A stretch of 64,000 bases of DNA from Diplonema japonicum. Lineage: Eukaryota; Protista; Euglenozoa: Diplonemea. The translations under genes were made by a program, and so were the position numbers. The DNA is taken from positions 372,001 to 436,000 of the forward strand of contig OZ025707.1 of the NCBI GenBank assembly GCA_964019335.1. The letters run 5' to 3'. Each line of letters starts with the position of its first letter. Within the stretch, counting starts at the first letter, position 1. Positions 1-12,530 of the stretch are shown piece after piece. The notes under the pieces were generated by a model. It ran no database searches and was not told the DNA's origin. It saw nothing but the letters and a program-made list of their open reading frames with translations.

Positions 1-3000
1 CAAGGACAGGTGTTCAAGAAGGCACAGCACTACCTGAGGATAACACTACAGACGGAGGCGGAAAGTTACAAGAAGGACATGGAGGGGTTGATTGACAAGA
101 TGGAGAAGCTTCTGGAGCTCCGCAAGGTGGTTACCAGCAAGGAAGCTGTGCGGCACGTTGACGGGATACTGAAAGAGGCGCAGAAGGCAGTGAAGGTGTA
201 CGCAAGGAACCTTGAGGGGATGAACGCGATAGCTGGGGCGACCCTGCTGCTCACGACAAGCATCTCCGAAAGGGTGACAGGGATCGACAAGCAGCTTCAG
301 GACATGAAGAAGGAGGTGAGCGACATCCACAAATACCTCCAGCTGCACAGGAAGCTGAAGGAGAACATCAGCCTCCTGCAACAAGCTCGTGTGGAGTCTT
401 GCAGCAGCGACCTCCATGGGTGTGAGAGGTACTCGTTCATGCAGGTTGAGAAGGATGTCCCCAAGAATAGTGACGACAACCTTGAAAGGAAAGAGAATAC
501 CCATGTCACAGAAGGTGCTAGAACAATTGCTCAGGCCGACACGAAAGCACGAACGTCTCACCACACTTCCGTTAGCTCCACTAAAGGATTTAAAAAAAAA
601 AAAGAAAAAGGTTTCAACCCCTTGGAATTTGCAACCCACTTGTTGAAGCCCTGCTCTGCCGGGAGGAGCATTATATTCGAGGGCTGTTGTTGGGGTACGG
701 AGTTCCTGTCACTGGTGGAGAAGGAGCTATGGAGCACCTACACCTATGACGATACTCAAAGCCTTCTCCCTATTCACGTGTTCCTGCGAAAGATGAAGAA
801 TCCGACGACACGCCTTGTGGAAGAGGCCCTGGAGGAGCAGCATGGGTTCACGCCGAGGAATGTGGAACGGCTTCAGGAGAAGACGAGGGCAAAGAAGGCA
901 CACCTGGCACTGATACTCGTGGGGTACTCGTTCCTCGACAAGGAGTTCCTTTTGGATTCCATGAGAGAGAAGAGCAAGCTGAGTGAGTGGGGTGACCCCA
1001 TCATCTTGGTGGAAGCAGACACCACCATCCTGGAGTACACTGCGGACAAGCTTCAGGGTGAGGGAAATTTAAAGGAAGCCTTTGAAGTGTACAGAATGAA
1101 GGAAATGAAGGACGAGGCCATCCAGAACATAATCGGCAGAGAGGAGGCTTCCATCGGGGCAGTGCTGAAGTGCGCTCTGCATTACAGAAGGTTCTCTACA
1201 TTCATTGAAGTGAAAGAAGAACAGCACATGACATTCCGCATGCTTCGTGCCTTCATTCGTACCATTTGCAATGAAAAATGGGGGTTGTATTATCGCTGGA
1301 TTGACAAGAAATGGCAAAAGCGTCCTTATTCAACCATACTCACAACATACCCCAGTTCTGACAAAAGTACGCTTCTGATGAAAACGATGTTGACTCAGAT
1401 GGTACCAAAAACTACGAGCGAAGTGGAGGAAAAGGCATCACACAAGGATGTGATGTGCGGGTGGGTGAAGTATATCATGGAAAAGGTTCAAACCGACGGG
1501 GTGTTCACTATCCTTGATGATCTGCATACTGGCATGATGGATGAAGATGAAGATGCACGGTCCGTCTACCATCTAACCAAAGAGATGAACATGGCCTTCT
1601 TGAGGACCTGCCTTGAGGAGTACCTCCGGCTGCCGTTGAGGTCGCTGAGTACAAAGCACCCCTCCATCACCGACAAGGAACTCGTGAAGCTTCTGATGGA
1701 CTACAACTCGCGCCTCGCACTTGACATGACACGGGACCACGCGAGGCAGGCACCTTATGAGAACAGGTGTCGTGGCTTTCTGAGGGCACAGCACACAGGA
1801 GGGCACGATGTCGGCAAGCTGGACCAGCAGATGGTGCGGGACCTGTTTGCGGCCTCTCCGGTGGAGGTCTCGAGGGACCAAGACGGGAAGAAACAGGAGA
1901 GGGTGTACAGCTTCAGCTCCGAGTGGCTGCAGGAGATCTTCACCGCCATTGCTGTCCACGACAAGCTGATGAGGTTCCCTCTGAACCGTATCTGTACGAA
2001 GTTCTTTGTGAGTGTCTTTTCTCACACCTATGACCCCAACTATGAAACAACCGACGAGCACAGCAGATGGGCACACTTCAGGAAGCAGAAAGACCTGATG
2101 GTGAGGAAGGTCAGAGAGGCAAATCCTGATTTCACCAAGGAGAAGGCCTCCAAGTATCTGGTTCTGGCGTGCAAGGCGGCGTGCGCTAGGAAGGCAACAT
2201 GGGACGTGCTGATGGAAGATCTGATGAACTACCCTGGTGTGCTGAGGAACTACTTGGCGAAGATGGTGTTGAAGAAGAAAAGTTTAAACTCTGAGGATAA
2301 GCTGCTGATCTGGTTCAGGGACACACTGCTCTCGCTGGTGGAGCTGTCGAAGCTGCCGTGGTGCGATGTTCCTGCCGCCGTGGCGATCACGATCCTGTCG
2401 GCTGCGAACGAAAGCTTTGCTGGGATGGACTTCAGAGGGATCCGAATACCGGGGGCGTCCCTTGAAGACAGCACCTTTGACAGGACAGACACTGATGGTG
2501 TGGAGATGAAAGGAATCATTCGGACCTACCTGCACGGCAAGGACAAAATCAAAAGTTCCCTGAGGAAGGGCCTCCTTTCATTTGCGGCCTTCACTGATGA
2601 CAAGGGCAAGGATACTGTTGCAGAGGTGTATGCGGACAAGGTGTTGTTCAGTGGGAAAGAAGTAAAACTGCCGGAAAAGATTATGGACCTACCGAAGAAT
2701 CCGAAGATCCTGAGCAAGATAGTGCAGAAGGGGAAACACTGTGTTCTTGTCGTTGCTTACGAAGTGGACGGGGTTGTGACAATCGCTGAGTGTCAACAGG
2801 AAGAGGTTTCTGTGGAGGTGGTGAGCACGCCGATGGAACTTATGTTCATTGCAGACGACAGTAAAGTGTGGTGTGTGAATCGAGGTGAAGGGGGAATCGT
2901 GAGGGACGCAAAGGCAACGACAGGGGCTCAAGTTGGAGAGGAAGGGGGGAAGGAGCATAAAGTTCAATGCGAACCTGTGTTAGTGAATAAAAAAAGTGAT

Positions 3001-4386
3001 GAAAAAGTGAGGATGGAGTTAGCACAAGTTGTGGAGGGGCTCACACCAGTTGGGGTGGACAGGTTCCTCACTTTGAACAGGAGTGCAGATGGACTGTCGT
3101 GGGAGTGCATTGTGTACAGTGTAAAAAAGACAAAAATGGACAAGGAAAACTATCGCTTCCCGATCCCCGCAAGCAAAGAAGAAGGACCACTGCGACATGT
3201 GGTGTGTGGCGACACGCTGCTCGTGCTGGGAGGGGACAAGGACAGCAACTGGCTGCTGAAGGAGGACAAGGCAGTGCGTCTGTACACAAAGAGCTTTTTT
3301 GACGAAAAGGAGCGAAAGAGGTTGAAACTTCTCAATGTTTACGCTTCTGCGGCGCGTACGTACTACCACCTTGAGGGCGACTTGTTGGTGGAAATGGAGC
3401 CCCCAAAGGGGGAGTTAGTACTGGGTGGCCCTGTGTTTGAGATAGCTATCTCGGGTAAAGGCAAGGTTGGGACGTTGGTGCGGTGTGGGGACACCAAGAT
3501 AGATGTTGTAACGTACTGCAAGGGGAGGAACACTGTGAGCCGTCTCAAGGAGCCGGTGGAGATGAGCTTGGCTGAGATCAAGTGGGACAACCATCAAAAA
3601 GTGTTCAAGGTGAGGTCTGACAAAAAAGAACAAGAAGAAGAAAAATGGTATAGAGCAGAAGAACTAGGCCCTGAGATGATAGTGTTGGTGAAAACAAGCC
3701 CGTCGGGAAATGATGATGTAGACCCCCCTGCTGTCCTGTCCTGTCCGGATCAAGAATACAAAGAGAGAACCCAGACCTGCGATCAGCTGGTGTACGAGGA
3801 CACCAACCCCCCTGCAGATGATGTTGCCACCATACGTAACGGTCCACACCAGGCATGGATAGAGAGGCCGCCACAGCAGCAGCAGCAGGCACTCGTGGTG
3901 AAGACAGGTGACGTGACGAAAGTTCTTCTGAAGGCAGACTTTATAAACACAGTTCAGTTACTTTACGACAACCTTGTCGCCGTTGTTGGCGGGAACGTGT
4001 ACTTCTGGGGCTGGAAGTGCAGCATCAATGCTCAGTACGGTTACACACCAGCAGGGTCCACAGGTGAGTGGTACGTGAACAAGCAGCTCACTGATACCAA
4101 CATCGTGAAGGTCGCAGCACCATGTCATGTATGCATTGCAATCAGAAATGAGAACAACACCTATTCAGGAGGAGGTATAGGAAGGTCCAAAACCAATGGC
4201 CGATACCGGGGGGGGCGTGGCGGGGATGATTGTATGAATTCTTTGTTTAAAAAAAAACAAAGACTTTGTATCAAAAAGAAAAAAGAAAAAAAGGATCTGA
4301 GGACCGGTAACCAAAGGGGAAAAAGAAAAGAAATAAAAGAAAAGCCAAAAAAGAAAAAAAAAAGCGAAAAAAAAAGGTCACCGTAA
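1..4386 (+). CDS. Large NACHT-like / pentapeptide-repeat / beta-rich C-terminal protein (NLR-like architecture, degenerate P-loop); 5' end outside window, true 3' end uncertain
   Basis: 1458-aa ORF open from the window edge. Ordered motifs IIFEG...ELWSTY, LPIHVFL..MKNPT, LALILVGY, YSFSSEWLQEIF and AVAITILSAANESFAGMDFRGIRIPGASLEDSTFDRTD recall NACHT-pentapeptide-WD40 proteins of Mortierella/Mycoavidus type. The tail after ~4170 is A-rich and probably intron or UTR. Confidence 0.7.
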   Translation, partial: QGQVFKKAQHYLRITLQTEAESYKKDMEGLIDKMEKLLELRKVVTSKEAVRHVDGILKEAQKAVKVYARNLEGMNAIAGATLLLTTSISERVTGIDKQLQDMKKEVSDIHKYLQLHRKLKENISLLQQARVESCSSDLHGCERYSFMQVEKDVPKNSDDNLERKENTHVTEGARTIAQADTKARTSHHTSVSSTKGFKKKKEKGFNPLEFATHLLKPCSAGRSIIFEGCCWGTEFLSLVEKELWSTYTYDDTQSLLPIHVFLRKMKNPTTRLVEEALEEQHGFTPRNVERLQEKTRAKKAHLALILVGYSFLDKEFLLDSMREKSKLSEWGDPIILVEADTTILEYTADKLQGEGNLKEAFEVYRMKEMKDEAIQNIIGREEASIGAVLKCALHYRRFSTFIEVKEEQHMTFRMLRAFIRTICNEKWGLYYRWIDKKWQKRPYSTILTTYPSSDKSTLLMKTMLTQMVPKTTSEVEEKASHKDVMCGWVKYIMEKVQTDGVFTILDDLHTGMMDEDEDARSVYHLTKEMNMAFLRTCLEEYLRLPLRSLSTKHPSITDKELVKLLMDYNSRLALDMTRDHARQAPYENRCRGFLRAQHTGGHDVGKLDQQMVRDLFAASPVEVSRDQDGKKQERVYSFSSEWLQEIFTAIAVHDKLMRFPLNRICTKFFVSVFSHTYDPNYETTDEHSRWAHFRKQKDLMVRKVREANPDFTKEKASKYLVLACKAACARKATWDVLMEDLMNYPGVLRNYLAKMVLKKKSLNSEDKLLIWFRDTLLSLVELSKLPWCDVPAAVAITILSAANESFAGMDFRGIRIPGASLEDSTFDRTDTDGVEMKGIIRTYLHGKDKIKSSLRKGLLSFAAFTDDKGKDTVAEVYADKVLFSGKEVKLPEKIMDLPKNPKILSKIVQKGKHCVLVVAYEVDGVVTIAECQQEEVSVEVVSTPMELMFIADDSKVWCVNRGEGGIVRDAKATTGAQVGEEGGKEHKVQCEPVLVNKKSDEKVRMELAQVVEGLTPVGVDRFLTLNRSADGLSWECIVYSVKKTKMDKENYRFPIPASKEEGPLRHVVCGDTLLVLGGDKDSNWLLKEDKAVRLYTKSFFDEKERKRLKLLNVYASAARTYYHLEGDLLVEMEPPKGELVLGGPVFEIAISGKGKVGTLVRCGDTKIDVVTYCKGRNTVSRLKEPVEMSLAEIKWDNHQKVFKVRSDKKEQEEEKWYRAEELGPEMIVLVKTSPSGNDDVDPPAVLSCPDQEYKERTQTCDQLVYEDTNPPADDVATIRNGPHQAWIERPPQQQQQALVVKTGDVTKVLLKADFINTVQLLYDNLVAVVGGNVYFWGWKCSINAQYGYTPAGSTGEWYVNKQLTDTNIVKVAAPCHVCIAIRNENNTYSGGGIGRSKTNGRYRGGRGGDDCMNSLFKKKQRLCIKKKKEKKDLRTGNQRGKRKEIKEKPKKKKKSEKKRSP

Positions 4387-4433
4387 GATAAAATGTCCGG
4401 ACCGCCGAAACATCCGGTGATTTTTTCTTTCGG

Positions 4434-4471
4434 ACCAACGATTCTAAAGCTACAGTTTCTGTACTTTATTG
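4434..4471 (+). other. Genomic copy of the spliced-leader exon (38 of the expected 39 nt)
   Basis: ACCAACGATTCTAAAGCTACAGTTTCTGTACTTTATTG. The 3' half CAGTTTCTGTACTTTATTG is the conserved kinetoplastid/diplonemid SL end, and the 5' part resembles the diplonemid (A)ACCAACGATT start. Confidence 0.9.
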
Positions 4472-4493
4472 CTACAGTTTCTGTACTTTATTG
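4472..4493 (+). repeat. Relic (5'-truncated) second SL copy
   Basis: CTACAGTTTCTGTACTTTATTG is an exact tandem copy of 4450-4471 and begins immediately after the first AG of the SL. Confidence 0.9.
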
Positions 4494-4686
4494 GTGTCCG
4501 ACCGTGCCAATAAAGTTTCACTCAGCAACGGTTTGAAAAGAAAATACAAATATTGAAAGTTGAAGCGCGACACAGATCAGCAACGTAAAGGAGAAGAGAA
4601 GAGAAGAGAAGAAAAATCAAGTCATATCAGATCATATCAGATCACAGCAAACACATTGACAATCTAAGCTACCGCGTCAGTCTAAG

Positions 4687-7631
4687 ATGGACGTTCACAA
4701 AGCTTTGAAGGGGTACGGGATGACAGCCCGCGGGAAGGGGTACGGGATTGGAAACGGAAACTCCTTCACGGAGCTGCTCCCAGCACGCCAGGGAGGGGCC
4801 ACCGCCGCGGACCCGGTTACCATCCAAGCCACCGCCCGCGCACTGAAGACCGACATCCACCTGATTACGGCCGACGGCGGCGCCCTCGTCTCCCCTATCG
4901 TGGGAGAGTCCAAGTCCAAGAAGCAGCCCATCCACGTCGGGCTCCAGTGGCACCCCTCCCTCCTGTTGCACGGGAGCTCCTCCATCACCTCCGTGCACGG
5001 CTTCTGCACGCAGGTCGTCGTGTCCACGATCCAGTCGCAGTACGGGTCCGCCACGCACTCCGTGCGGGTCGTTGCCGTGCACTTCTTCTCCACGCAACCC
5101 CCGGAGCTCACGAGCACGGACCCGATGCACGCGGGCTCGCTCGTCGTCCCCCACTCGCACGGTAGCCGAACACCCCCTTGGATGTGCTCCCCGTCGCCAC
5201 GCTGCTCCACTCCCCGTTCGGGGAGAAGTAGGCGTTTCCGTTCGGACTCGACGGCTCCCCGCTCATCCAGTTGTCGTAGCTGCTCACAGGATTCCCGGTC
5301 TCGGGTCCGGTGCTCCAGGTCCACGCCCCGTTCGCCCCGGTCGCACCCATCCAACCCTCCGCTCCGATCTTCCCGCGCGCCACCGCCGTCTCCGCGGCTG
5401 TGTTCACCGTCAGGAGGTACCCGGTCGTCCCGAGGAAGGTCTTCCCCGCGCACGCCTGCTTCGCGTCCTCCCACGTGCATCCGGCCGCCGAGGCGCCGCC
5501 CGCCACCTGGCAAGCGTAGTAGCAGTAGTAGTGGCCCGTCCTCCCGTCGAACACCCCTTCCCCGTAGTTCCAGGTGATGCTCCTCGCTTCATCCTAACTT
5601 AAAACCATTTCAGTCGCCTTCCCAGCCGAAGAGCTCGTCCTGAAGGAGACCTTGCTGAGGGCTGCCGCGAACTCCGTGAGGTCCCTGTCCTGGCCGTCCA
5701 TCGGGGTCAACACGATCGACCCCGTTGCCGCCGACCACTCCGTCTTCATCCCGAGGGCCGGGCACTCCGCGCACTCCAGCGTGTCCTTCCCCTTCACGTA
5801 GTCCTCGCTGTTGATGCTCACGGAGGCGCCGGGCATACCTCAACGCCACGGAGCCGTTCAACGTGAACGTGCTGAAGAAAGCTATGCAGCAGTTCATGCC
5901 ACGGGTCGGGATTCCAACCTCAGACGGAGAGGCGAAGGCATGGAGGGGACCGAACAGCAAGCCACCACGGAAGGAACCGCAGGCAAAGAAATGCTGGCTC
6001 CTCGAGCAGGGACAGTTCGACCTACCTTTCATAGAGTGGGAAGAGCTGGTGGCAGGAAAAGATGGCATAGCCATCGCGACCGAGGTCAACGTGGCAGAAA
6101 AGATGACCTGGGACGGGAACAAGGCAGTCCTCCTCAAACGCAACGGCAAGGGACGATACGAACACGACGTCGTGCTCAAGGCGGCTGGAGAGTACTCGAA
6201 CAGGACAATGTTCTTGCACGTACTGAGCGGAAAGATCTCGCGCTCTCAAAAAAATAAAACCACGGTGGGTATTGACCTGGCCGCGATGTAGGAGAGGGTG
6301 ACCTCCGAACCCCGGAAGCTGATCCAGGAGATGCTGGGCTGTAGGACGATCCACAGGATTGACAAGTACGTGGATGGACCGGCGCCCCAAGGGTTGACGT
6401 GCTCGTCACGATCGCAACCGAGAACCGCCGCCACCTCGTAGGTGCATCCGGGAAGATGGGGATCTTCGTCAAGCCGAAAGACGTGGAGAAGTCCCCTGTC
6501 GCCTGGCTCCCGAAGGAGATCACTCTGGAAGAGGCACTCGAGCTGGCGGAGACTGAGAAGCAGGGGTTAGCGCTGCGCGAATCCGACGGCCGTCTCGAGG
6601 TGAGAACATCGGAGGAGAGGAAAACCACGCTCCTCGACAAGATTATATTAGGCGAGGAGGAGCGACAACGCGGGCAGCATGGGGAGCCCAGGTGGCGTTT
6701 GTCGGGACTGTACGGGCAGTGCGGAGCCGAACACGTTGAGGCGATACTCGAGGCGATTAAGTGGGAGGCCGTCCCACTACACGGCGGATGGTGCAACAGC
6801 ATGAGGTGCTGGTACATCCGAGGGGGCGAACCCCCAACCACGTCACTGAAGATCACGTCCCCAACTGGGCGGGTCCTCAACTGCAGGATAGCTCCCGACG
6901 TTAGAAACCCACCCGCCAAAAAGACACCGCCAGCTCAGTCCTGGGGAAGGCCGAAAACGGGGACCACAAACAACGCGGGCAAGTCGTACCTCGGAGCAGT
7001 GACGGGGTCCTCTCAACCACAAACCACCAGCTTCAGGAAAGAAGGTTGCCCCTGCGGGTAAAGCCGCCCCACCGAAGTCCGGTAAGTCGCCCACAACATC
7101 GAAGAAAGCCGATCCCCCGGCCTTTGAGGACCGCCTCACAGCAATCGAGAACGCACTTCGTAAACTTGCAGGGGAACCGGTCAGCGACGTCAAGCCACCG
7201 GCTGAGGTGGTCAGTCTACGGAGGGAGAACGCGGAGCTACGGGAGGAGGTCCGGCAGATGCACATCCAGATGGCCGCGCTCACCGAGCAAATTAAGAGAC
7301 TCACGGAAGCGACGCTCGCGAAGCCTGGCCCCGGGAACCAGGCCCCGATGATGCACCCTGCTGCCGGGGAGGAGATGATGGACGACTCCGAAGATGACTT
7401 GGGTCCCCAACTGACGATGACACCGACATCGACTTGGACGAGGGCCCCGCCGACATTGACGACTGCCTGGGCAAGGGCATCTGCCACGTCTACAACGGGA
7501 CATATCAATGCTGGAAGGGTGTATGCCACTACTGCGGCGGGAACATCACAAAGAACAACCCAGCACAGACCTGCATATTACCAGACTGCAAAAGGGTAAA
7601 ATTCCGCGGGTGCGAACAATGCGAACAATGA
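4687..7631 (+). pseudogene. Retroelement ORF1 (interrupted, frameshifted), with OTU-like N-terminus and Cys-rich C-terminus
   Basis: Segments 4687-4940, 5835-6291, 6399-7061, 7207-7430 and 7434-7631. Ends in CHYCGG...CILPDCKRVKFRGCEQCEQ. Lies between the SL and the APE domain. Confidence 0.65.
4941..5834 (-). pseudogene. Captured, inverted fragment of a C-type lectin-domain / Cys-rich surface protein gene
   Basis: Minus-strand frames give GHYY...TWEDAKQACA...GYLLTVNTAAE...WMGA...WTWSTGPETG...YDNWMSGEP (C-type lectin motifs) plus Cys-rich repeats. Contains a stop and frameshifts, is more GC-rich than the flanks, and has no gene start or end. Confidence 0.8.
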
Positions 7632-7779
7632 CTCCATGAGGGCTCCCCCCAAACCCACCCCCCAAACCCATTCCCTCCGCCCCGTTCCCATCCTTCCAAA
7701 TACAATCCGATACGCTTATCTGACATAAAATTTGAACGTCTCACCGAACAGGGTATCGAACCCCCCCCGGACCAGAGCC

Positions 7780-8583
7780 AGAACACGAGAAATTCACCAT
7801 TTTCACACACAACGGCTCATCACTTAACAACAGGCTGAGCGAGTACTCCACCGTCCTCCCGGACGCATTCTGCATCCAGGAGACAGCCCTCACGGCTCAG
7901 ACGCAGCTGGAAATCGAACACGTGCTGAGAGACGATGACTGGGGCAAACGATACGCCAGATTCTGGAGCAAGCCACAGCCAGGCAGGGAGTCCAGTGGTG
8001 TCACATCTCTGACGATAGCGAAACGGGGTGGTCTAGGAACCCTGGTGAAAAAACCACGTACGGCGGTGCGCGAAACGAATGGGCACAAGGACAGGTGGTC
8101 ACACGTGAATAAAGACTCACTCGATGGAAGCAAACGGTGGCTTCACCTGATCAACGTCTACTGCCACTCGGGCCAGGACCAAGCCAAGACGAGCTTCTCC
8201 ACTACATCCTTTGCCGTCTTAAGTTCGAACTGGGAGACGTGCCTGTGGCCGTGGTGGGCGATTTCAACACGGACGAAGTACGATCCCCCACGTTAAGGAA
8301 AGCTATACAGACAGACTGGGTAGACGCCGCTGCGTTCTGTGCAAGAAGGGATGGTGTACAGGCGGAGGACACGTTCGTTAGGACCAACTGCAGCACGAGG
8401 ATTGACAGGGTCCTGCTGAATAACATCGCGGCCCAAGGTCTCGAACATTGCGGAGTAAGCGATATGATCACCGGGTCGGACCACCGATGCTTGTCGGTGA
8501 CACTCAACATCCCAGCGTTTCGTCAAGAAGTCCTGAGGTACACCATCCCACAGGAGATACCGAAGACCAAGAAGGGTAACTGA
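7780..8583 (+). pseudogene. Retroelement ORF2: apurinic-like endonuclease domain (frameshifted)
   Basis: Motifs THNG, FCIQET, LINVY, VVGDFN, TRIDRVL and SDH in order. Confidence 0.9.
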
Positions 8584-9770
8584 TGCAGAAGTCGAGGTAC
8601 CGGGAGTTCACAGCAGCACAGGAGCCCACTGAAGCTTTCTCGGAGATATCAGACCTCGCAGAGGAGTACCTATTACATGGGTACAAGGAGCCGACGCGCG
8701 GCGTGTACACCGGGAGAGGCAAAGTACGGGAGCCTACGAAATCGGAGCTAAGTGCGAGGTCGGCGGAGTCGGCGGTCGGAGCGGCATCGAACAGACAACA
8801 AAGACTAGAAAAGCTGAAGCACAAGATCCGCAGTGCGAAACAGCAAATGCTAAGGCTTTATGAAAACGGACACTGCGGTCCGCTGCCGGTAGAGTTACGG
8901 AACGTCCTCAGAAATATTGCGACTCTAGGAGAAGAACTGAAGGTTGACAACTGCCAGGTGGACGCGACAGGGGGTATCGACAGCATCAGGGAGGAGCTGG
9001 ACATAGCAGAGGACTTCGCCCAGGGAATGCTATCAGCTACTCCAATACCGCAAGAGAATGCAGACGAAGGCCTACGAACGCTCAGTCCGTGCTGACTTTG
9101 GGAAAGAACGCAAGCACATCACAGCCTGGGTCAGAGACCGCCCAAACCAGAGAACGGACGTAGTTGAGGCAGCAGACGGAGGGGTGACGGCGAACCTACA
9201 GGAAATGGACAAGGTGATGCGGAACGCGTGGTCGGGCGTCTTCTGTGCGCGAACACCCGAGGAAGAGCCACAGTATGAGCGGTTTGCACAACGTTACGGG
9301 GACCTGATCAAGAAAGCCCCAATGGCACGGACTCCCATCACAGCAGAACAGCAGAGGGAAGTGATCAGGAAGAAGCCGGAGAAAGGAGCATGTGGCGTGG
9401 ACGGTTGGCGGATGAGTGAACTGAAGCGTCTCCCAACGAGCATCCTGAAGGCTTTCGCAGACCTCTTCAACCTGATCGAGGAAACAGGCCAGTGGCCGAG
9501 ACAGATCACGACAGCCCTGGTGTCCCTGATTCCGAAGGGTGAGGGGTCAGCACCACTGAATCATCGTCCCATCACAGTGACCAGCACCATCTACCGCTTG
9601 TGGGCGTGTACGAGCTGAAGGGTGTCCTTGACTGGCAAGAACGCTGGATCACGCCGAGACAGCACGGGTTTCGACCCAAACACAGTACGACAACTGCCCT
9701 CATGGAGTTATGTACCAAGCTGGAACTTGCTCTGGTGGAAGGAGAACCGCTGGAAGGACTAGCCCTAGAC
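8583..9770 (+). pseudogene. Retroelement ORF2: linker and N-terminal half of reverse transcriptase, truncated at GLALD
   Basis: GACGVDGW, LFNLIEETGQWP, LIPK, RPITVTSTIYRLWA, QHGFRP and LEGLALD. No QG or YxDD motif follows. Confidence 0.92.
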
Positions 9771-10279
9771 GCAGATGTGAACAAGGCAGAAGTGTACGGT
9801 GCTACCCCGTGTTTCGTAGCGGCTCAAAACGGCCACACCGACTCATTGCGCATCCTCATCACGGAAGGAAAGGCAGATCCGAATCGCGCCACGAATGACG
9901 GTGCTACCCCGTGTTTCATGGGTGCTCATAATGGACACGCTGACGCACTACGTATCCTTATCACGGAGGGAAAGGCAGATGTGAACAAGGCCGAAATCGA
10001 CGGTGCTACCCCGTGTTTCGTAGCGGCTCAAAACGGCCACACCGACTCATTGCACATCCTCATCACGGAAGGAAAGCAGATACGAATCGCGCCACAAATG
10101 ACGGTGCTACCCCATGTTTCATAGCTGCCGAAAAGGGAAAAGCCGATGCGTTACGTATCCTCATCACGGAAGGAAAGGCAGATGTGAACAAGGCCAACAA
10201 AAACGGTATTACCCCGTTTAGCAGAGCGGCTAGTAACGAACACACCGACGCATTGCACATCCTCGAAAAGCTGATGTGA
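9771..10279 (+). pseudogene. Captured 3' fragment of an ankyrin-repeat gene (about 5 repeats, one frameshift near 10075, own stop codon)
   Basis: Repeated ADVNKA...GATPCFVAAQNGHTDSLRILITEGK units, fused in frame to RT at 9770/9771 and followed by AT-richer UTR-like sequence to ~10530. Confidence 0.92.
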
Positions 10280-10559
10280 AGAGGCTCTCAGCGACGGTGA
10301 CGTGACACAAAACAGCAACACAGAATAAGGCGAGAGTTGTAGATATTTCCCCCCCGTGACGGGTTATAGATGTTGTCCTGTGTCCGGCGTATGAACAGCA
10401 TCGATGGCGTGAGGAACAGATAATAACGTGTACCATAGTTTTTCTTTTCTTTGCTGCTAAAGCAGACCCAGCCAACGTAGTGTCATAGTCATAGCCCTTT
10501 TTTTCCCTTTGCCTCAATCATTTATTCCGATCAGACCGGCTGTTGCAAAAAGGAATTGA

Positions 10560-11558
10560 TCCACGGAATGGAAGCGGGTGCATGTCCGTCCACGAACGCC
10601 TGGTGGAGGAAGCTAGTCACGGAGACCGCTGATATCGTACAGACTGCGGCGGATCATCAGCGGTGCAGTGTTCACGGTACACCCTCGAGTGTGGGGGAAG
10701 CAATTGGATGAACGTGAGGGTGTGGAAAGCTCGTCTCTTGCGTGCGACGTCTGCGACCATCGATGCCAGACGACGACAGAAGTCACGGAGCACGCCCTAT
10801 GGGAATGTGCACCAGCGAGAGCTGCCCTGACAAACGAGGGATATGGCGGGATGACGCGAAGTGACCTACCTGCAGTGACCGCCCTCCACGGGATCATTCC
10901 AAGGGGCGCAACGGGGGCTGCGAAGCAACAGGCGGCAGTCGTGCAACGATACCTGTTGGATGTCGTGTCAAGACGAGACGCCAGAGCGGCTGAACGGAGC
11001 ACCAGAATCCTCACCACCAACCCGTGGGATGAGATCACATCGGGGAAGCAGCACACTGTGCCCACAGTGGAGCTGTTGAAATCGAACGGAGCGTCGGGAA
11101 AGGTCCTAATGTTCTACATAAAGAGCGTCCTCAGGTGGCTGAAAAGCCTAAGATGGTACGCAGGCAGGAAGTTGACGTCCGTCACGACGATGGAGCTCGC
11201 AGTAGACTATGCAGGCCACCCGACAGTCCTTGGCTGGACCCTCGACGACCAGGACTGGCTCACAGAGAAGGCTGGAAGGATGCGATACATCTTAGGACGT
11301 ATTCAGAAGTGCACAGCAAAGAGTGGGAAGAATGCTTTCCCCGCCAACGCAAAGACAAGGGTACACACCCTTCGACATCTTGGGGGCCCGACGACACACG
11401 GCTACGACAGGAGACCACTCTTCTCCTCGAGCCAAACCGCCCCCTACCTAGCACGACTCCAAGCAATGTTTCTCGCCCAGATGCCGTCCATCTCATCGCG
11501 ACAAACAGCCACCGCAGGCCCCAGACAGCAACCGCAGAACGGTGACCGATTAGTGTGA
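10560..11558 (+). pseudogene. Retroelement ORF2 C-terminal region with zinc knuckle
   Basis: LRRIISGAVFT...CDVC...TEHALWEC, typical of the C-terminal CCHC region of non-LTR ORF2. Confidence 0.8.
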
Positions 11559-12530
11559 ATTTCTCCCTGAACGGTGAGCACCCACCCGCACACCGAAATT
11601 TATCAAATTTATTCCTAAAGATGTGAGAATAGTATTTACTTTGCCGAAGGACTATCCATGAGGATGATAATCTTGGGAGTAGAAAAAAAGTCGACAATTG
11701 ACCCTTTTTTTTTTTTTTTTTTTTGCCAGAAGCTCCACGTCCTTTAATAGTTTAACAAAAAAAGGGAAAGAAAACACGTTTTATCTTTCCTTCGAATCTC
11801 AGCCTGCACTCCTCTATTGGAGGTGCAAAAATCCTTTTTTTTTTCTTGGTGTCTTCGGGCCTGATTCTCGGGTGTATACTTGTATTTTCTTTTTGTCTTT
11901 GTAGTTTTTTTCTTTTTTTTTCTCGCATTTCTCTTTCTCTTTTAGTGTAAAGAAAGAAAAACCTAATACATTATAATTCTAACGGGGGAAAAAAAAAAAA
12001 AAAGTGTAAAAGTGCTTAAGCAACAAGCATGAACTGATGATCCCTCCCACGAGAGGGAGGGATCAATCTATGACAAGACTGGCACTCCTTCTCATCAAAT
12101 TGCGAACTGGAAAACAAAAAAAAGAGAAGAAAAAAGGAGAAGAAGAAGAAGAAAAACCATGAATCTTAATCCTCAAGCATCTGCTTGTCCTCTTCTCCAC
12201 CTCTCACTGCTCTCTCATAAAAAGAACGAGAGAAACCTTCTAACTCTACCTGCTTCTTTAACAAGAAAAAGAAGGAAAGGAGGAGATCCCACCTTCTCCT
12301 TGGGTGTGCTCCCTCTTTTCTTGCTTTTGAGAGCTATTTTCTTGTAATTCTTGAGGGGGGGGAAAAGAGTGGGCTGTACACATCATAGCCAACATAAGAA
12401 AAAAGAAAAGAACACTGTGAAGCAAAAAATGCCGGACGGACAAACTCCCGGACGGCGCGATTAAAACCCGGCCATTTCTCCGTCAAGCATTTTTTTTTTG
12501 TTTTACAGTAGCTATTTTTTTTGTCCATGT

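What the first reader, a model, noticed from the sequence alone, without database searches (positions are those of the whole stretch)
4433..4493. Retroelement capped by a full SL plus a relic SL cut at the SL's internal AG: a self-supplied trans-splice acceptor
Seen: the element starts with a 38-nt SL exon followed directly by SL nucleotides that begin right after the SL's first AG (..CTAAAG|CTACAG..). Known: tandem relic SLs truncated at an internal AG mark repeated mRNA-to-cDNA recycling in dinoflagellates. Inferred: a parent copy already had a genomic SL, its AG served as trans-splice acceptor, a fresh SL was added, and the RNA was fully reverse-transcribed. Each full-length insertion would then bring its own acceptor and could be expressed without a promoter from any polycistronic unit. 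The G at 4433, where the first SL A is expected, could be a cap-derived or mis-read nucleotide.
Basis: partly seen in the sequence, partly recalled or inferred. Interest (0 to 1): 0.9.

Follow-up and report, generated by a model that had tools for sequence, protein, structure and literature searches.

The report
Spliced-leader-headed retrotransposon with relic leader
A broken jumping gene in a diplonemid protist starts with the cell's own 39-base mRNA leader plus a clipped second leader that begins right after a splice-acceptor AG. This suggests an earlier DNA copy was transcribed, trans-spliced with a fresh leader and copied back into DNA, a pattern known for dinoflagellate genes but, as far as I could find, unreported for euglenozoan retrotransposons.

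Summary
Window 4433-4471 is the organism's 39-nt spliced leader (SL), with G instead of A at nt 1. Window 4472-4493 is an exact copy of SL nt 18-39, starting right after the SL's first AG. This is not an SL RNA gene. The true SL genes, in tandem ~350-bp units beside 5S rRNA, have a different intron and different flanks.

The SL heads a defective APE+RT LINE fragment (4433-9770). All 26 genomic copies of its 5' UTR are SL-headed, in unrelated, mostly T-rich flanks. About 200 copies from at least 8 element families are SL-headed genome-wide. Tandem SL relics are rare. There are seven 16-nt relics, across four families, all starting after the SL's second AG. The 22-nt relic in this window is the only one of its kind. 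All eight begin after one of the SL's only two AGs and end at the exon boundary, which fits trans-splicing onto a read-through transcript of an SL-bearing parent.

Relics mark only about 4% of copies. The normal SL-to-body junction has no AG, so the SL is mostly inherited as DNA, and the "self-supplied acceptor" is a side route. RNA and read-level tests could not be run. The scan had already flagged SL-headed LINEs elsewhere in this genome.

The parts
4421..4432 (+). T-rich 5' flank (pyrimidine run of 11, then g) directly upstream of the SL. It corresponds to the T-tract target site seen at other copies.
   Evidence: In 23 family-a copies the 25 nt upstream are 81% pyrimidine and 67% T, against 47% and 21% for the window as a whole.
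4433..4471 (+). Full 39-nt spliced-leader exon copy with G instead of A at nt 1. Its only two AGs are at 4448-4449 and 4454-4455.
   Evidence: Identical at nt 2-39 to the exon of the tandem SL RNA genes on C59, C15, C51 and C4. Those genes lie beside a 5S rRNA gene.
4472..4493 (+). Relic SL, an exact copy of SL nt 18-39. It begins right after the first AG and ends at the exon's last base.
   Evidence: It is the only such case in the genome.
4494..4686 (+). 5' UTR of LINE family 'a', beginning GT. The segment 4485-4494 pairs with 4507-4516 as a 10-bp hairpin over the SL-end/GT junction.
   Evidence: 26 genomic copies, all preceded by the SL. Fold z-score -2.07.
4687..7600 (+). ORF1-like region of the element, interrupted at 4940-5827 by sequence absent from other copies. 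The interruption is a minus-strand C-type lectin fragment.
   Evidence: Alignment to 12 other copies. Pfam PF00059 on the minus strand.
7900..8583 (+). APE-type (EEP) endonuclease domain of ORF2, with broken frames in this copy.
   Evidence: Pfam PF03372. Intact 1428-aa ORF2 in sister copies.
9058..9770 (+). N-terminal part of the reverse transcriptase. Homology to the family ends at 9770.
   Evidence: RVT_1 is found in the intact sister copy L090.
9771..10528 (+). 3' end of an ankyrin-repeat gene (stop codon at 10278-10280) plus its 3' UTR, fused to the truncated element. It is not part of the element family.
   Evidence: Pfam Ank families, sequence. The nearest other genomic copy is only 84% identical.
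10529..11607 (+). A separate 5'-truncated insertion of a different, very abundant T-tailed LINE family ('Y'). It is flanked by the 8-nt direct repeat TTTATTCC at 10521-10528 and 11608-11615.

Best explanation
Window 4433-9770 is a dead, 3'-truncated copy of an APE+RT non-LTR retrotransposon of a diplonemid. Like about 200 other copies from at least 8 families in this genome, its DNA begins with the host's spliced-leader exon. In these elements the SL is normally a DNA-inherited 5' module joined to a fixed first base (SL|GT...).

The extra 22-nt relic records one unusual generation, in these steps:
- A parent copy that already carried the genomic SL sat behind a T-rich (polypyrimidine) target site, in the sense orientation within a polycistronic unit.
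- It was transcribed by read-through from upstream.
- The trans-spliceosome used the first AG downstream of that tract, which is SL nt 16-17, and attached a fresh SL.
- That capped RNA was reverse-transcribed to its 5' end and inserted here.

Shown: the sequence anatomy, the family-wide SL heads, the true SL gene, and the relic ends at an AG and at the exon boundary. Inferred: read-through transcription, the splicing event itself, and the origin of the G at nt 1 (misreading or skipping of a modified, capped first nucleotide).
For: (1) SL identity. Tandem ~350-bp SL RNA genes have the same exon, a GT intron, a T-run terminator and a neighbouring 5S rRNA gene.
(2) All 26 genomic copies of 4494-4700 are SL-headed, in unrelated flanks. 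The census gives 217 SL 3' ends, of which only about 9 are SL RNA genes or retro-copied SL RNA.
(3) A genome-wide search for tandem SL ends found 9 cases. Seven are the 16-nt relic starting after ACAG, in families a, b, c and d, and one is this 22-nt relic starting after AAAG. The SL has only these two AGs, and every relic ends exactly at the exon's last base. If break points were random, with 2 of 38 positions eligible, five independent events would have a probability of about 4e-7.
(4) Shifted junctions in two families also follow an AG. SL|TAACGG follows ...CTCAG and SL|GTAGAGCGG follows ...CCAG.
(5) Family-a copies sit right behind pyrimidine tracts, and no AG lies between the tract and SL nt 16-17.
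(6) All large ORFs of the window are on the + strand, as is the element.
(7) Negative control. SL concatemers in cDNA-like environmental contigs break at SL nt 3, 6, 7, 8 or 19, never after an AG.
(8) The same 16-nt relic precedes RT-encoding ORFs in unrelated environmental contigs.
(9) Relic SLs cut at an internal AG are the accepted signature of mRNA-to-DNA recycling in dinoflagellates (PMC12014239, PMC5585692, PMC3942190).
Against: - The 22-nt relic is a single case.
- Relics are rare, about 4% of SL-headed copies. If read-through plus splicing at the first AG were common, 22-nt relics should be common too.
- Some shifted SL junctions in other families follow TG, CG or GG rather than AG, so not every odd junction is a canonical splice.
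- SL RNA arrays end at contig ends. A variant SL gene with a duplicated exon therefore cannot be excluded.
Confidence: 0.72

Rival explanations
1. The repeat is a post-insertion tandem duplication from replication slippage, or an assembly error, and has nothing to do with splicing.
For: The case is unique in the genome. The two units are identical, so the duplication is young. No read-level check was possible.
Against: The unit's left end falls just after one of only two AGs, and its right end falls exactly (within 1 nt) at the SL exon boundary. The sister 16-nt relic shows the same two properties in four families. Microhomology at the ends is a single G.
Confidence: 0.08
2. The tandem is a reverse-transcriptase template switch or concatenation made during cDNA synthesis. 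The RT stopped inside the SL and jumped to another SL-bearing RNA or to a free SL exon.
For: LINE RTs are known to jump templates (established knowledge). SL concatemers do occur in cDNA-like contigs. Some shifted junctions are non-AG but all follow a G.
Against: A jump would have to land exactly at the last base of an SL exon inside another RNA. The concatemers seen in cDNA break at nt 3, 6, 7, 8 or 19, not after an AG. All eight genomic relics follow an AG.
Confidence: 0.07
3. A variant SL RNA gene encodes a longer leader with an internal 22-nt (or 16-nt) duplication, and that leader was simply trans-spliced onto the element RNA once.
For: SL RNA arrays are incompletely assembled and lie at contig ends. 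The 16-nt form appears in four families, as a shared donor would produce.
Against: None of the 217 SL ends followed by the SL RNA intron carries a duplication. This model leaves the AG and exon-end boundaries as coincidences.
Confidence: 0.05
4. This is a site-specific insertion into an SL RNA gene of the SLACS/CZAR/CRE type, with the 22-mer as a target-site duplication.
For: The SL sequence sits at the element's boundary.
Against: - The upstream flank is the end of a 1458-aa ORF plus an A-rich tail and a T-rich stretch, not the SL promoter.
- No SL or intron sequence follows the element.
- The SL exon is complete, not split.
- 25 other copies carry the SL in unrelated flanks.
- The element encodes an APE endonuclease.
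Confidence: 0.01

Closest known systems
Relic spliced leaders (DinoRL) of dinoflagellate retrogenes, or 'mRNA recycling' (Slamovits & Keeling 2008, as cited in PMC12014239; also PMC5585692, PMC3942190)
   Same: The SL is encoded in DNA at the 5' end of a retro-copied sequence. The relic is cut at an AG inside the SL and is followed by the rest of the SL. It is read as repeated rounds of trans-splicing, reverse transcription and insertion.
   Different: Here the cargo is the retrotransposon itself, not a host gene, and the host is a euglenozoan with a 39-nt kinetoplastid-type SL. Most copies carry a full, unclipped SL that appears to be inherited through DNA. Relics are the exception (about 4%), whereas they define dinoflagellate retrogenes. 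The polypyrimidine tract is supplied by the element's T-tract target preference.
SLACS / CZAR / CRE1-2 / LINS1, the SL-gene-specific retrotransposons of trypanosomatids
   Same: They are non-LTR elements physically joined to SL sequence in a trans-splicing euglenozoan.
   Different: Those elements insert at a fixed site inside the SL exon of SL RNA genes, split the exon, duplicate SL gene sequence and use a restriction-like endonuclease (from my own knowledge of the family). Here the SL is complete and heads the element at dispersed, non-SL-gene sites, and the endonuclease is APE-type.
Pr77 hallmark of L1Tc / ingi / NARTc / RIME / DIRE / SIDER (PMC1874656, PMC4748587, PMC8190864, PMC3185411)
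   Same: It is a short 5' module shared across LINE families of a euglenozoan. It lets the element make translatable RNA in a genome almost without Pol II promoters. Pr77 binds the SL-gene factors TBP and SNAP50. In this genome the SL plus about 79 nt is shared between subfamilies that are only about 70-78% identical further on.
   Different: Pr77 transcripts are unspliced and Pr77 is not the SL. Here the module is the SL exon itself. No promoter activity was tested, and no HDV-like ribozyme was detected by Rfam in 3500-6000.
Extra or altered 5' nucleotide of L1 copies and processed pseudogenes, attributed to reverse transcription of the cap (recalled from the literature, not checked here)
   Same: The first base of the retro-copy deviates from the template's first base. 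G is common at nt 1 in family b and in this copy.
   Different: Here G, C or T replaces A1 rather than being added in front of it. That would fit a hypermodified cap-4 first nucleotide better than simple cap copying. This is inference only.

Membership tests
Relic-SL retro-recycling (dinoflagellate type) | Complete or partial SL encoded in genomic DNA at the 5' end of a retro-copied unit | tested here: met
   4433-4493; 26 of 26 copies of the family are SL-headed.
Relic-SL retro-recycling (dinoflagellate type) | Relic starts immediately 3' of an AG inside the SL and runs to the exon's last base | tested here: met
   The 22-nt relic follows AG at nt 16-17. Seven 16-nt relics follow AG at nt 22-23. 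No other break point occurs among gap-free tandems.
Relic-SL retro-recycling (dinoflagellate type) | Transcripts that carry a fresh SL joined to the relic | not testable with these tools
No listed run is on record as RNA.
SLACS/CZAR/CRE site-specific SL-gene retrotransposons | Insertion inside an SL RNA gene, with SL promoter upstream and the rest of the SL gene downstream | tested here: not met
   The flanks differ from the SL RNA gene unit, and copies are dispersed.
SLACS/CZAR/CRE site-specific SL-gene retrotransposons | Restriction-enzyme-like endonuclease and no APE domain | tested here: not met
   PF03372 lies N-terminal to RVT_1 in intact ORF2 and in the window copy.
APE-type non-LTR retrotransposon (LINE) | ORF2 with an APE endonuclease followed by a reverse transcriptase | tested here: met
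   L090 has PF03372 and PF00078, and sister copies have a 1428-aa open frame. The window copy keeps the APE and only the RT N-terminus.
APE-type non-LTR retrotransposon (LINE) | 5'-truncated copies and target-site duplications | tested here: met
   Truncated copies L073 and L076 are flanked by T tracts. An 8-nt direct repeat flanks the family-Y fragment in the window. No TSD could be defined for 4433-9770 because its 3' end is missing.
APE-type non-LTR retrotransposon (LINE) | Poly(A) or A-rich 3' tail | tested here: not met
   In 20 of 20 copies the 3' ends are ...ATCAA(A) followed by a T run of variable length. This was established for family Y. The 3' end of family a was not retrieved.
Pr77-like internal promoter module | 5' module that drives transcription from the element's first nucleotide | not testable with these tools
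   Support is indirect only: a fixed SL|GT junction with no AG before it, and no SL-less copy.

The most novel reading that the evidence does not exclude
In this diplonemid, LINEs have taken the host spliced leader as a heritable, DNA-encoded 5' module. The module is the SL exon, the SL RNA's own GT splice-donor dinucleotide and a hairpin over that junction. In at least one abundant family it is combined with a T-run tail and T-tract targeting. The RNA would then start at SL nt 1 and be treated as 'already trans-spliced', with an SL-type cap and translation competence, needing neither a host promoter nor trans-splicing. Under this reading, relic SLs such as the one at 4472-4493 are fossils of the occasional alternative route, read-through followed by trans-splicing at the SL's own AG behind the T-tract.
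Probability: 0.4. Interest if true: 0.85.

Novelty: new variant of a known kind. Interest (0 to 1): 0.62.

Why it matters
Euglenozoa transcribe genes polycistronically, and every mRNA needs the capped SL. How a retrotransposon gets a capped, translatable and full-length template in such a genome is known only for the trypanosomatid Pr77 elements. This locus, together with about 200 sister copies, shows that diplonemid LINE templates carry the SL. The relics give sequence-level evidence that a genomic SL can itself be re-spliced at its internal AGs, which is the dinoflagellate 'recycling' signature in a second, unrelated trans-splicing lineage. The data also pose a concrete, testable puzzle: how is the exact SL|GT head inherited without an acceptor AG? 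This bears on whether the SL sequence can direct its own transcription start or capping. Practically, SL heads and relics are useful markers for dating and tracing retrotransposition in diplonemid genomes, and they can mislead annotation of trans-splice sites.

Tried and rejected
- Rfam scan of 3500-6000 at E<=10 gave no SL RNA, ribozyme or other credible RNA family.
- The idea that 4494 onward is the SL RNA intron was rejected. The true intron starts GTACCCAATC and shares only GT and a CAATAAA-type stem.
- The poly-T upstream of the SL as an antisense poly(A) tail was rejected. The ORFs are on the + strand, and 5'-truncated copies have the same T tracts on both sides.
Later genome-search runs returned no loci. 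The 3' end and TSDs of family a were therefore not obtained.
I could not test whether the related Diplonema papillatum LINEs (about 45% identity) are SL-headed.
- A tree or alignment of family b/d heads, meant to test whether relic copies form one clade, failed because these chromosome-end copies are too rearranged.
- The environmental cDNA-like contigs with SL concatemers are not from this genome. They serve only as a rough control.
- Literature searches found no report of SL-headed retrotransposons in Euglenozoa. The D. papillatum genome paper does not mention them. The library is not exhaustive.

Full report
OBSERVATION. Window 4433-4471 reads as a 39-nt kinetoplastid/diplonemid-type spliced leader. 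Window 4472-4493 repeats its last 22 nt exactly. To decide what the real SL is, I searched the window's own assembly, G000, which has 62.5 Mb in 132 contigs. The window is C60:372001-436000. Tandem units of about 346-352 bp on C59, C15, C51 and C4 carry the same 39 nt, with A at nt 1. They share a conserved upstream region, an intron starting GTACCCAATC, and a T-run terminator. A 5S rRNA gene lies beside them. This linkage is usual for SL RNA genes and was reported for Diplonema papillatum (PMC10161547). These units are therefore the SL RNA genes, and 4433-4471 is their exon with G for A at nt 1. The exon contains only two AG dinucleotides, at nt 16-17 and nt 22-23. The relic starts at nt 18 and ends at nt 39.

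WHAT IT HEADS. The sequence after the relic is not the SL RNA intron. It is the 5' UTR of a non-LTR retrotransposon. The window copy aligns with a dozen sister copies over 4471-4939 and 5828-9770. It has an EEP/APE endonuclease domain and the N-terminal part of a reverse transcriptase. Sister copies on C98, C24, C69, C85 and C102 keep an open 1428-aa ORF2 with PF03372 followed by PF00078. The closest named relatives of the RT are LINE ORF2s of Diplonema papillatum at about 45% identity. Unnamed transcriptome proteins reach 72-90% identity. The host is therefore a diplonemid other than D. papillatum.

The window copy is dead and composite:
- 4940-5827 is an insert absent from other copies. It carries a minus-strand C-type lectin fragment.
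- Family homology stops at 9770, where the 3' end and 3' UTR of an ankyrin gene follow.
- 10529-11607 is a separate 5'-truncated insertion of another, very abundant and young LINE family ('Y', 99.5-99.9% identity between copies). It is flanked by an 8-nt direct repeat.

The finding's element is therefore 4433-9770, not a full-length insertion.

(a) 'Tabulate what precedes each copy.' All 26 genomic matches to 4494-4700 were scored. Every one is preceded by the SL, in unrelated flanks. Twenty-four carry one SL, the C102 copy has SL plus a 16-nt relic, and this window has SL plus a 22-nt relic.
(b) 'Compare with the true SL RNA gene array.' The flanks and the intron differ, as described above.
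(c) 'Map SL-containing RNA reads' and 'long reads.' Neither was possible. 

GENOME-WIDE PICTURE. The SL's 3' 19-mer occurs 217 times, against 0 for the reversed pattern. About nine of these are SL RNA genes or retro-copied whole SL RNAs. The rest head retroelement families, counted by eye from the 200 listed rows:
- family b (SL|GTCGTTCG...), about 67 copies;
- family a (SL|GTGTCC...), about 25;
- family d (SL|GTCGTCTG...), about 23;
- family c (SL|GTATCG...), about 13;
- smaller families f, g, h and others.

An exact search for two SL ends within 30 nt of each other gave nine hits. Seven are SL plus TTTCTGTACTTTATTG, the 16-nt relic beginning after ACAG. They lie on C8, C12, C20, C58, C76, C83 and C102, in families a, b, c and d. 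One is this window's 22-nt relic. One is a pair of copies 5'-truncated inside the SL. Every gap-free relic thus starts after one of the two AGs and ends at the exon's last base. Counting the four families plus this case as five independent events, random break points would give this result with a probability of about (2/38)^5, or about 4e-7. For this case alone the figure is only about 5%, before also requiring the right end to coincide with the exon boundary.

Further support comes from copies whose SL is joined further inside the UTR, right after an AG of the parental sequence (...CTCAG|TAACGG and ...CCAG|GTAGA). These could also be cis-splices from the SL|GT donor. Only the relics require a fresh SL added in trans.

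WHERE THE ACCEPTOR COMES FROM. Family-a copies sit directly behind pyrimidine tracts. The 25 nt upstream are on average 81% Y and 67% T, against 47% and 21% in the window. The median longest Y run is 11. There is no AG between the tract and SL nt 16-17. The same T tracts flank 5'-truncated copies and the 3' ends of family Y, which end in ...ATCAAA plus a T run rather than poly(A). The tract is therefore a target-site feature. In kinetoplastid-type trans-splicing, the first AG after a polypyrimidine tract is the usual acceptor (established knowledge). A typical family-a insertion therefore offers that signal, made half from the target and half from its own SL. The element is also in the sense orientation in a unit where all large ORFs are on the + strand.

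If read-through plus splicing at the SL's AG were the normal way to make template RNA, relics should be common and should pile up. They mark 8 of about 200 copies, none is double, and the predicted favourite (the first AG) was used once. Conversely, the standard junction (SL|GT...) has no AG before it in any DNA copy, and no SL-less copy of family a exists in the assembly. Splicing of a read-through transcript therefore cannot regenerate that junction. The SL must usually pass from copy to copy through DNA, with template RNAs that begin at SL nt 1-2.

Several features hint that the head is a functional module rather than a passive scar:
- every major family has GT right after the SL, as the SL RNA gene does, while only 2 of 36 SL-bearing cDNA-like environmental contigs do (rough control from other organisms);
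- families a and c have a 10-bp hairpin across the SL-end/GT junction;
- the SL is invariant between subfamilies whose adjacent UTR differs.

Precedents exist. Pr77 of trypanosomatid LINEs is an internal Pol II promoter that binds SL-gene factors (PMC1874656, PMC8190864). A promoter role has also been suggested for the DinoSL in retrocopies (PMC12014239). None of this was tested here.

THE G AT 4433. Nt 1 is the least faithful position of SL heads. In family a it is T or C, with A in 2 of 17 distinct copies. In family b it is G in 6 of 12. In retro-copied SL RNAs it is T. Because bona fide capped SL RNA shows the same defect when retro-copied, misreading or skipping of a modified first nucleotide is a reasonable inference. 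It remains an inference, and G could also be inherited from the parent.

RIVALS. Slippage or an assembly error, an RT template switch, and a variant SL gene with a duplicated exon each fail to explain why both ends of all eight relics fall where splicing predicts. None is excluded by direct evidence. Site-specific insertion into an SL gene (SLACS/CZAR/CRE type) is refuted by the flanks and by the APE domain.

BEYOND THIS GENOME. A scan of public metagenome contigs found the same 16-nt relic, preceded by 80-110 nt of other sequence, in front of RT-encoding ORFs (L157, L125) and a TRP-channel ORF (L096). Their organisms have a different SL 5' half. I did not verify whether those assemblies are DNA or cDNA. 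Contigs with SL concatemers broken at nt 3, 6, 7, 8 or 19 look like SL-primer or cDNA artefacts. They show what non-splicing tandems look like.

NOVELTY. Relic SLs cut at an internal AG are textbook for dinoflagellate retrogenes. I found no paper reporting SL-headed retrotransposons or SL relics in Euglenozoa in the searchable library, which is not exhaustive. This scan had already flagged and followed up SL-headed LINEs and a relic SL on other DNA of this same genome.

Noticed in passing
G000 C2:150557, C30:484555, C107:8900 (loci L021, L016, L011): Whole SL RNAs (exon plus intron) are retro-copied behind T tracts instead of the SL gene promoter. Nt 1 reads T. The T-tract-targeting LINE machinery apparently also mobilises SL RNA.
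   Followed up: partly
window 10521-11615: A 5'-truncated copy of an abundant, very young LINE family (464 candidate 3' ends, 99.5-99.9% alike). Its 3' end is ...ATCAAA plus a T run instead of poly(A). Here it is flanked by the 8-nt direct repeat TTTATTCC, inside the 3' UTR of an ankyrin gene.
   Followed up: partly
genome-wide; window 4494-4495: All major SL-headed families start with GT right after the SL, the same dinucleotide as the SL RNA gene's splice donor. Only 2 of 36 SL-bearing environmental cDNA-like contigs do.
   Followed up: partly
L048 (C63:1-2481) and heads of families b, d, h near many contig ends: A long (CCCGCAAA)n run at a contig end is probably the telomere repeat. SL-headed elements of families b, d and h abut such repeats, and many lie within 10 kb of contig ends. 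On C24, family-d heads recur every ~10.6 kb (7162, 17821, 28480, 39063).
   Followed up: no
L157, L125, L096, L149, L197 (public metagenome contigs): The same 16-nt relic (TTTCTGTACTTTATTG after ...ACAGTTTCTGTACTTTATTG) occurs in other, unidentified euglenozoans. In two cases it lies in front of RVT_1-encoding ORFs, one of them with a UCH domain, and once in front of a TRP-channel ORF.
   Followed up: partly
Ga00739xx contigs among L092-L211: Contig ends carry 2-5 tandem SL pieces broken at SL nt 3, 6, 7, 8 or 19, never after an AG. These look like SL-primer or cDNA concatemers. The contigs are not from this genome.
   Followed up: partly
L017 (C17:633353): SL plus 12 nt (GTAGGGAAGGCT) plus at least 39 A. 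This is a tiny trans-spliced, polyadenylated RNA copied into DNA. Shorter versions, SL|GGAAGGCT, join after the AG of GTAG (C20:670776, C51:128002, C52:245870).
   Followed up: no
L025 (C101:338771-338851), L022 (C108): Two complete SLs are separated by 4-6 nt (SL+CCCT+SL and SL+GTCGTT+SL from nt 3). These may be splicing to an AG in the upstream flank, or nested events.
   Followed up: no
window 4940-5827 and 9771-10280: Host gene fragments sit inside or fused to the element: a minus-strand C-type lectin piece within ORF1, and the 3' end of an ankyrin-repeat gene joined in frame where the RT core should be.
   Followed up: partly
window 10-4386: A 1458-aa open frame with no Pfam match ends in an A-rich stretch just upstream of the element, on the same strand. 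It is probably the upstream gene of the polycistronic unit.
   Followed up: no
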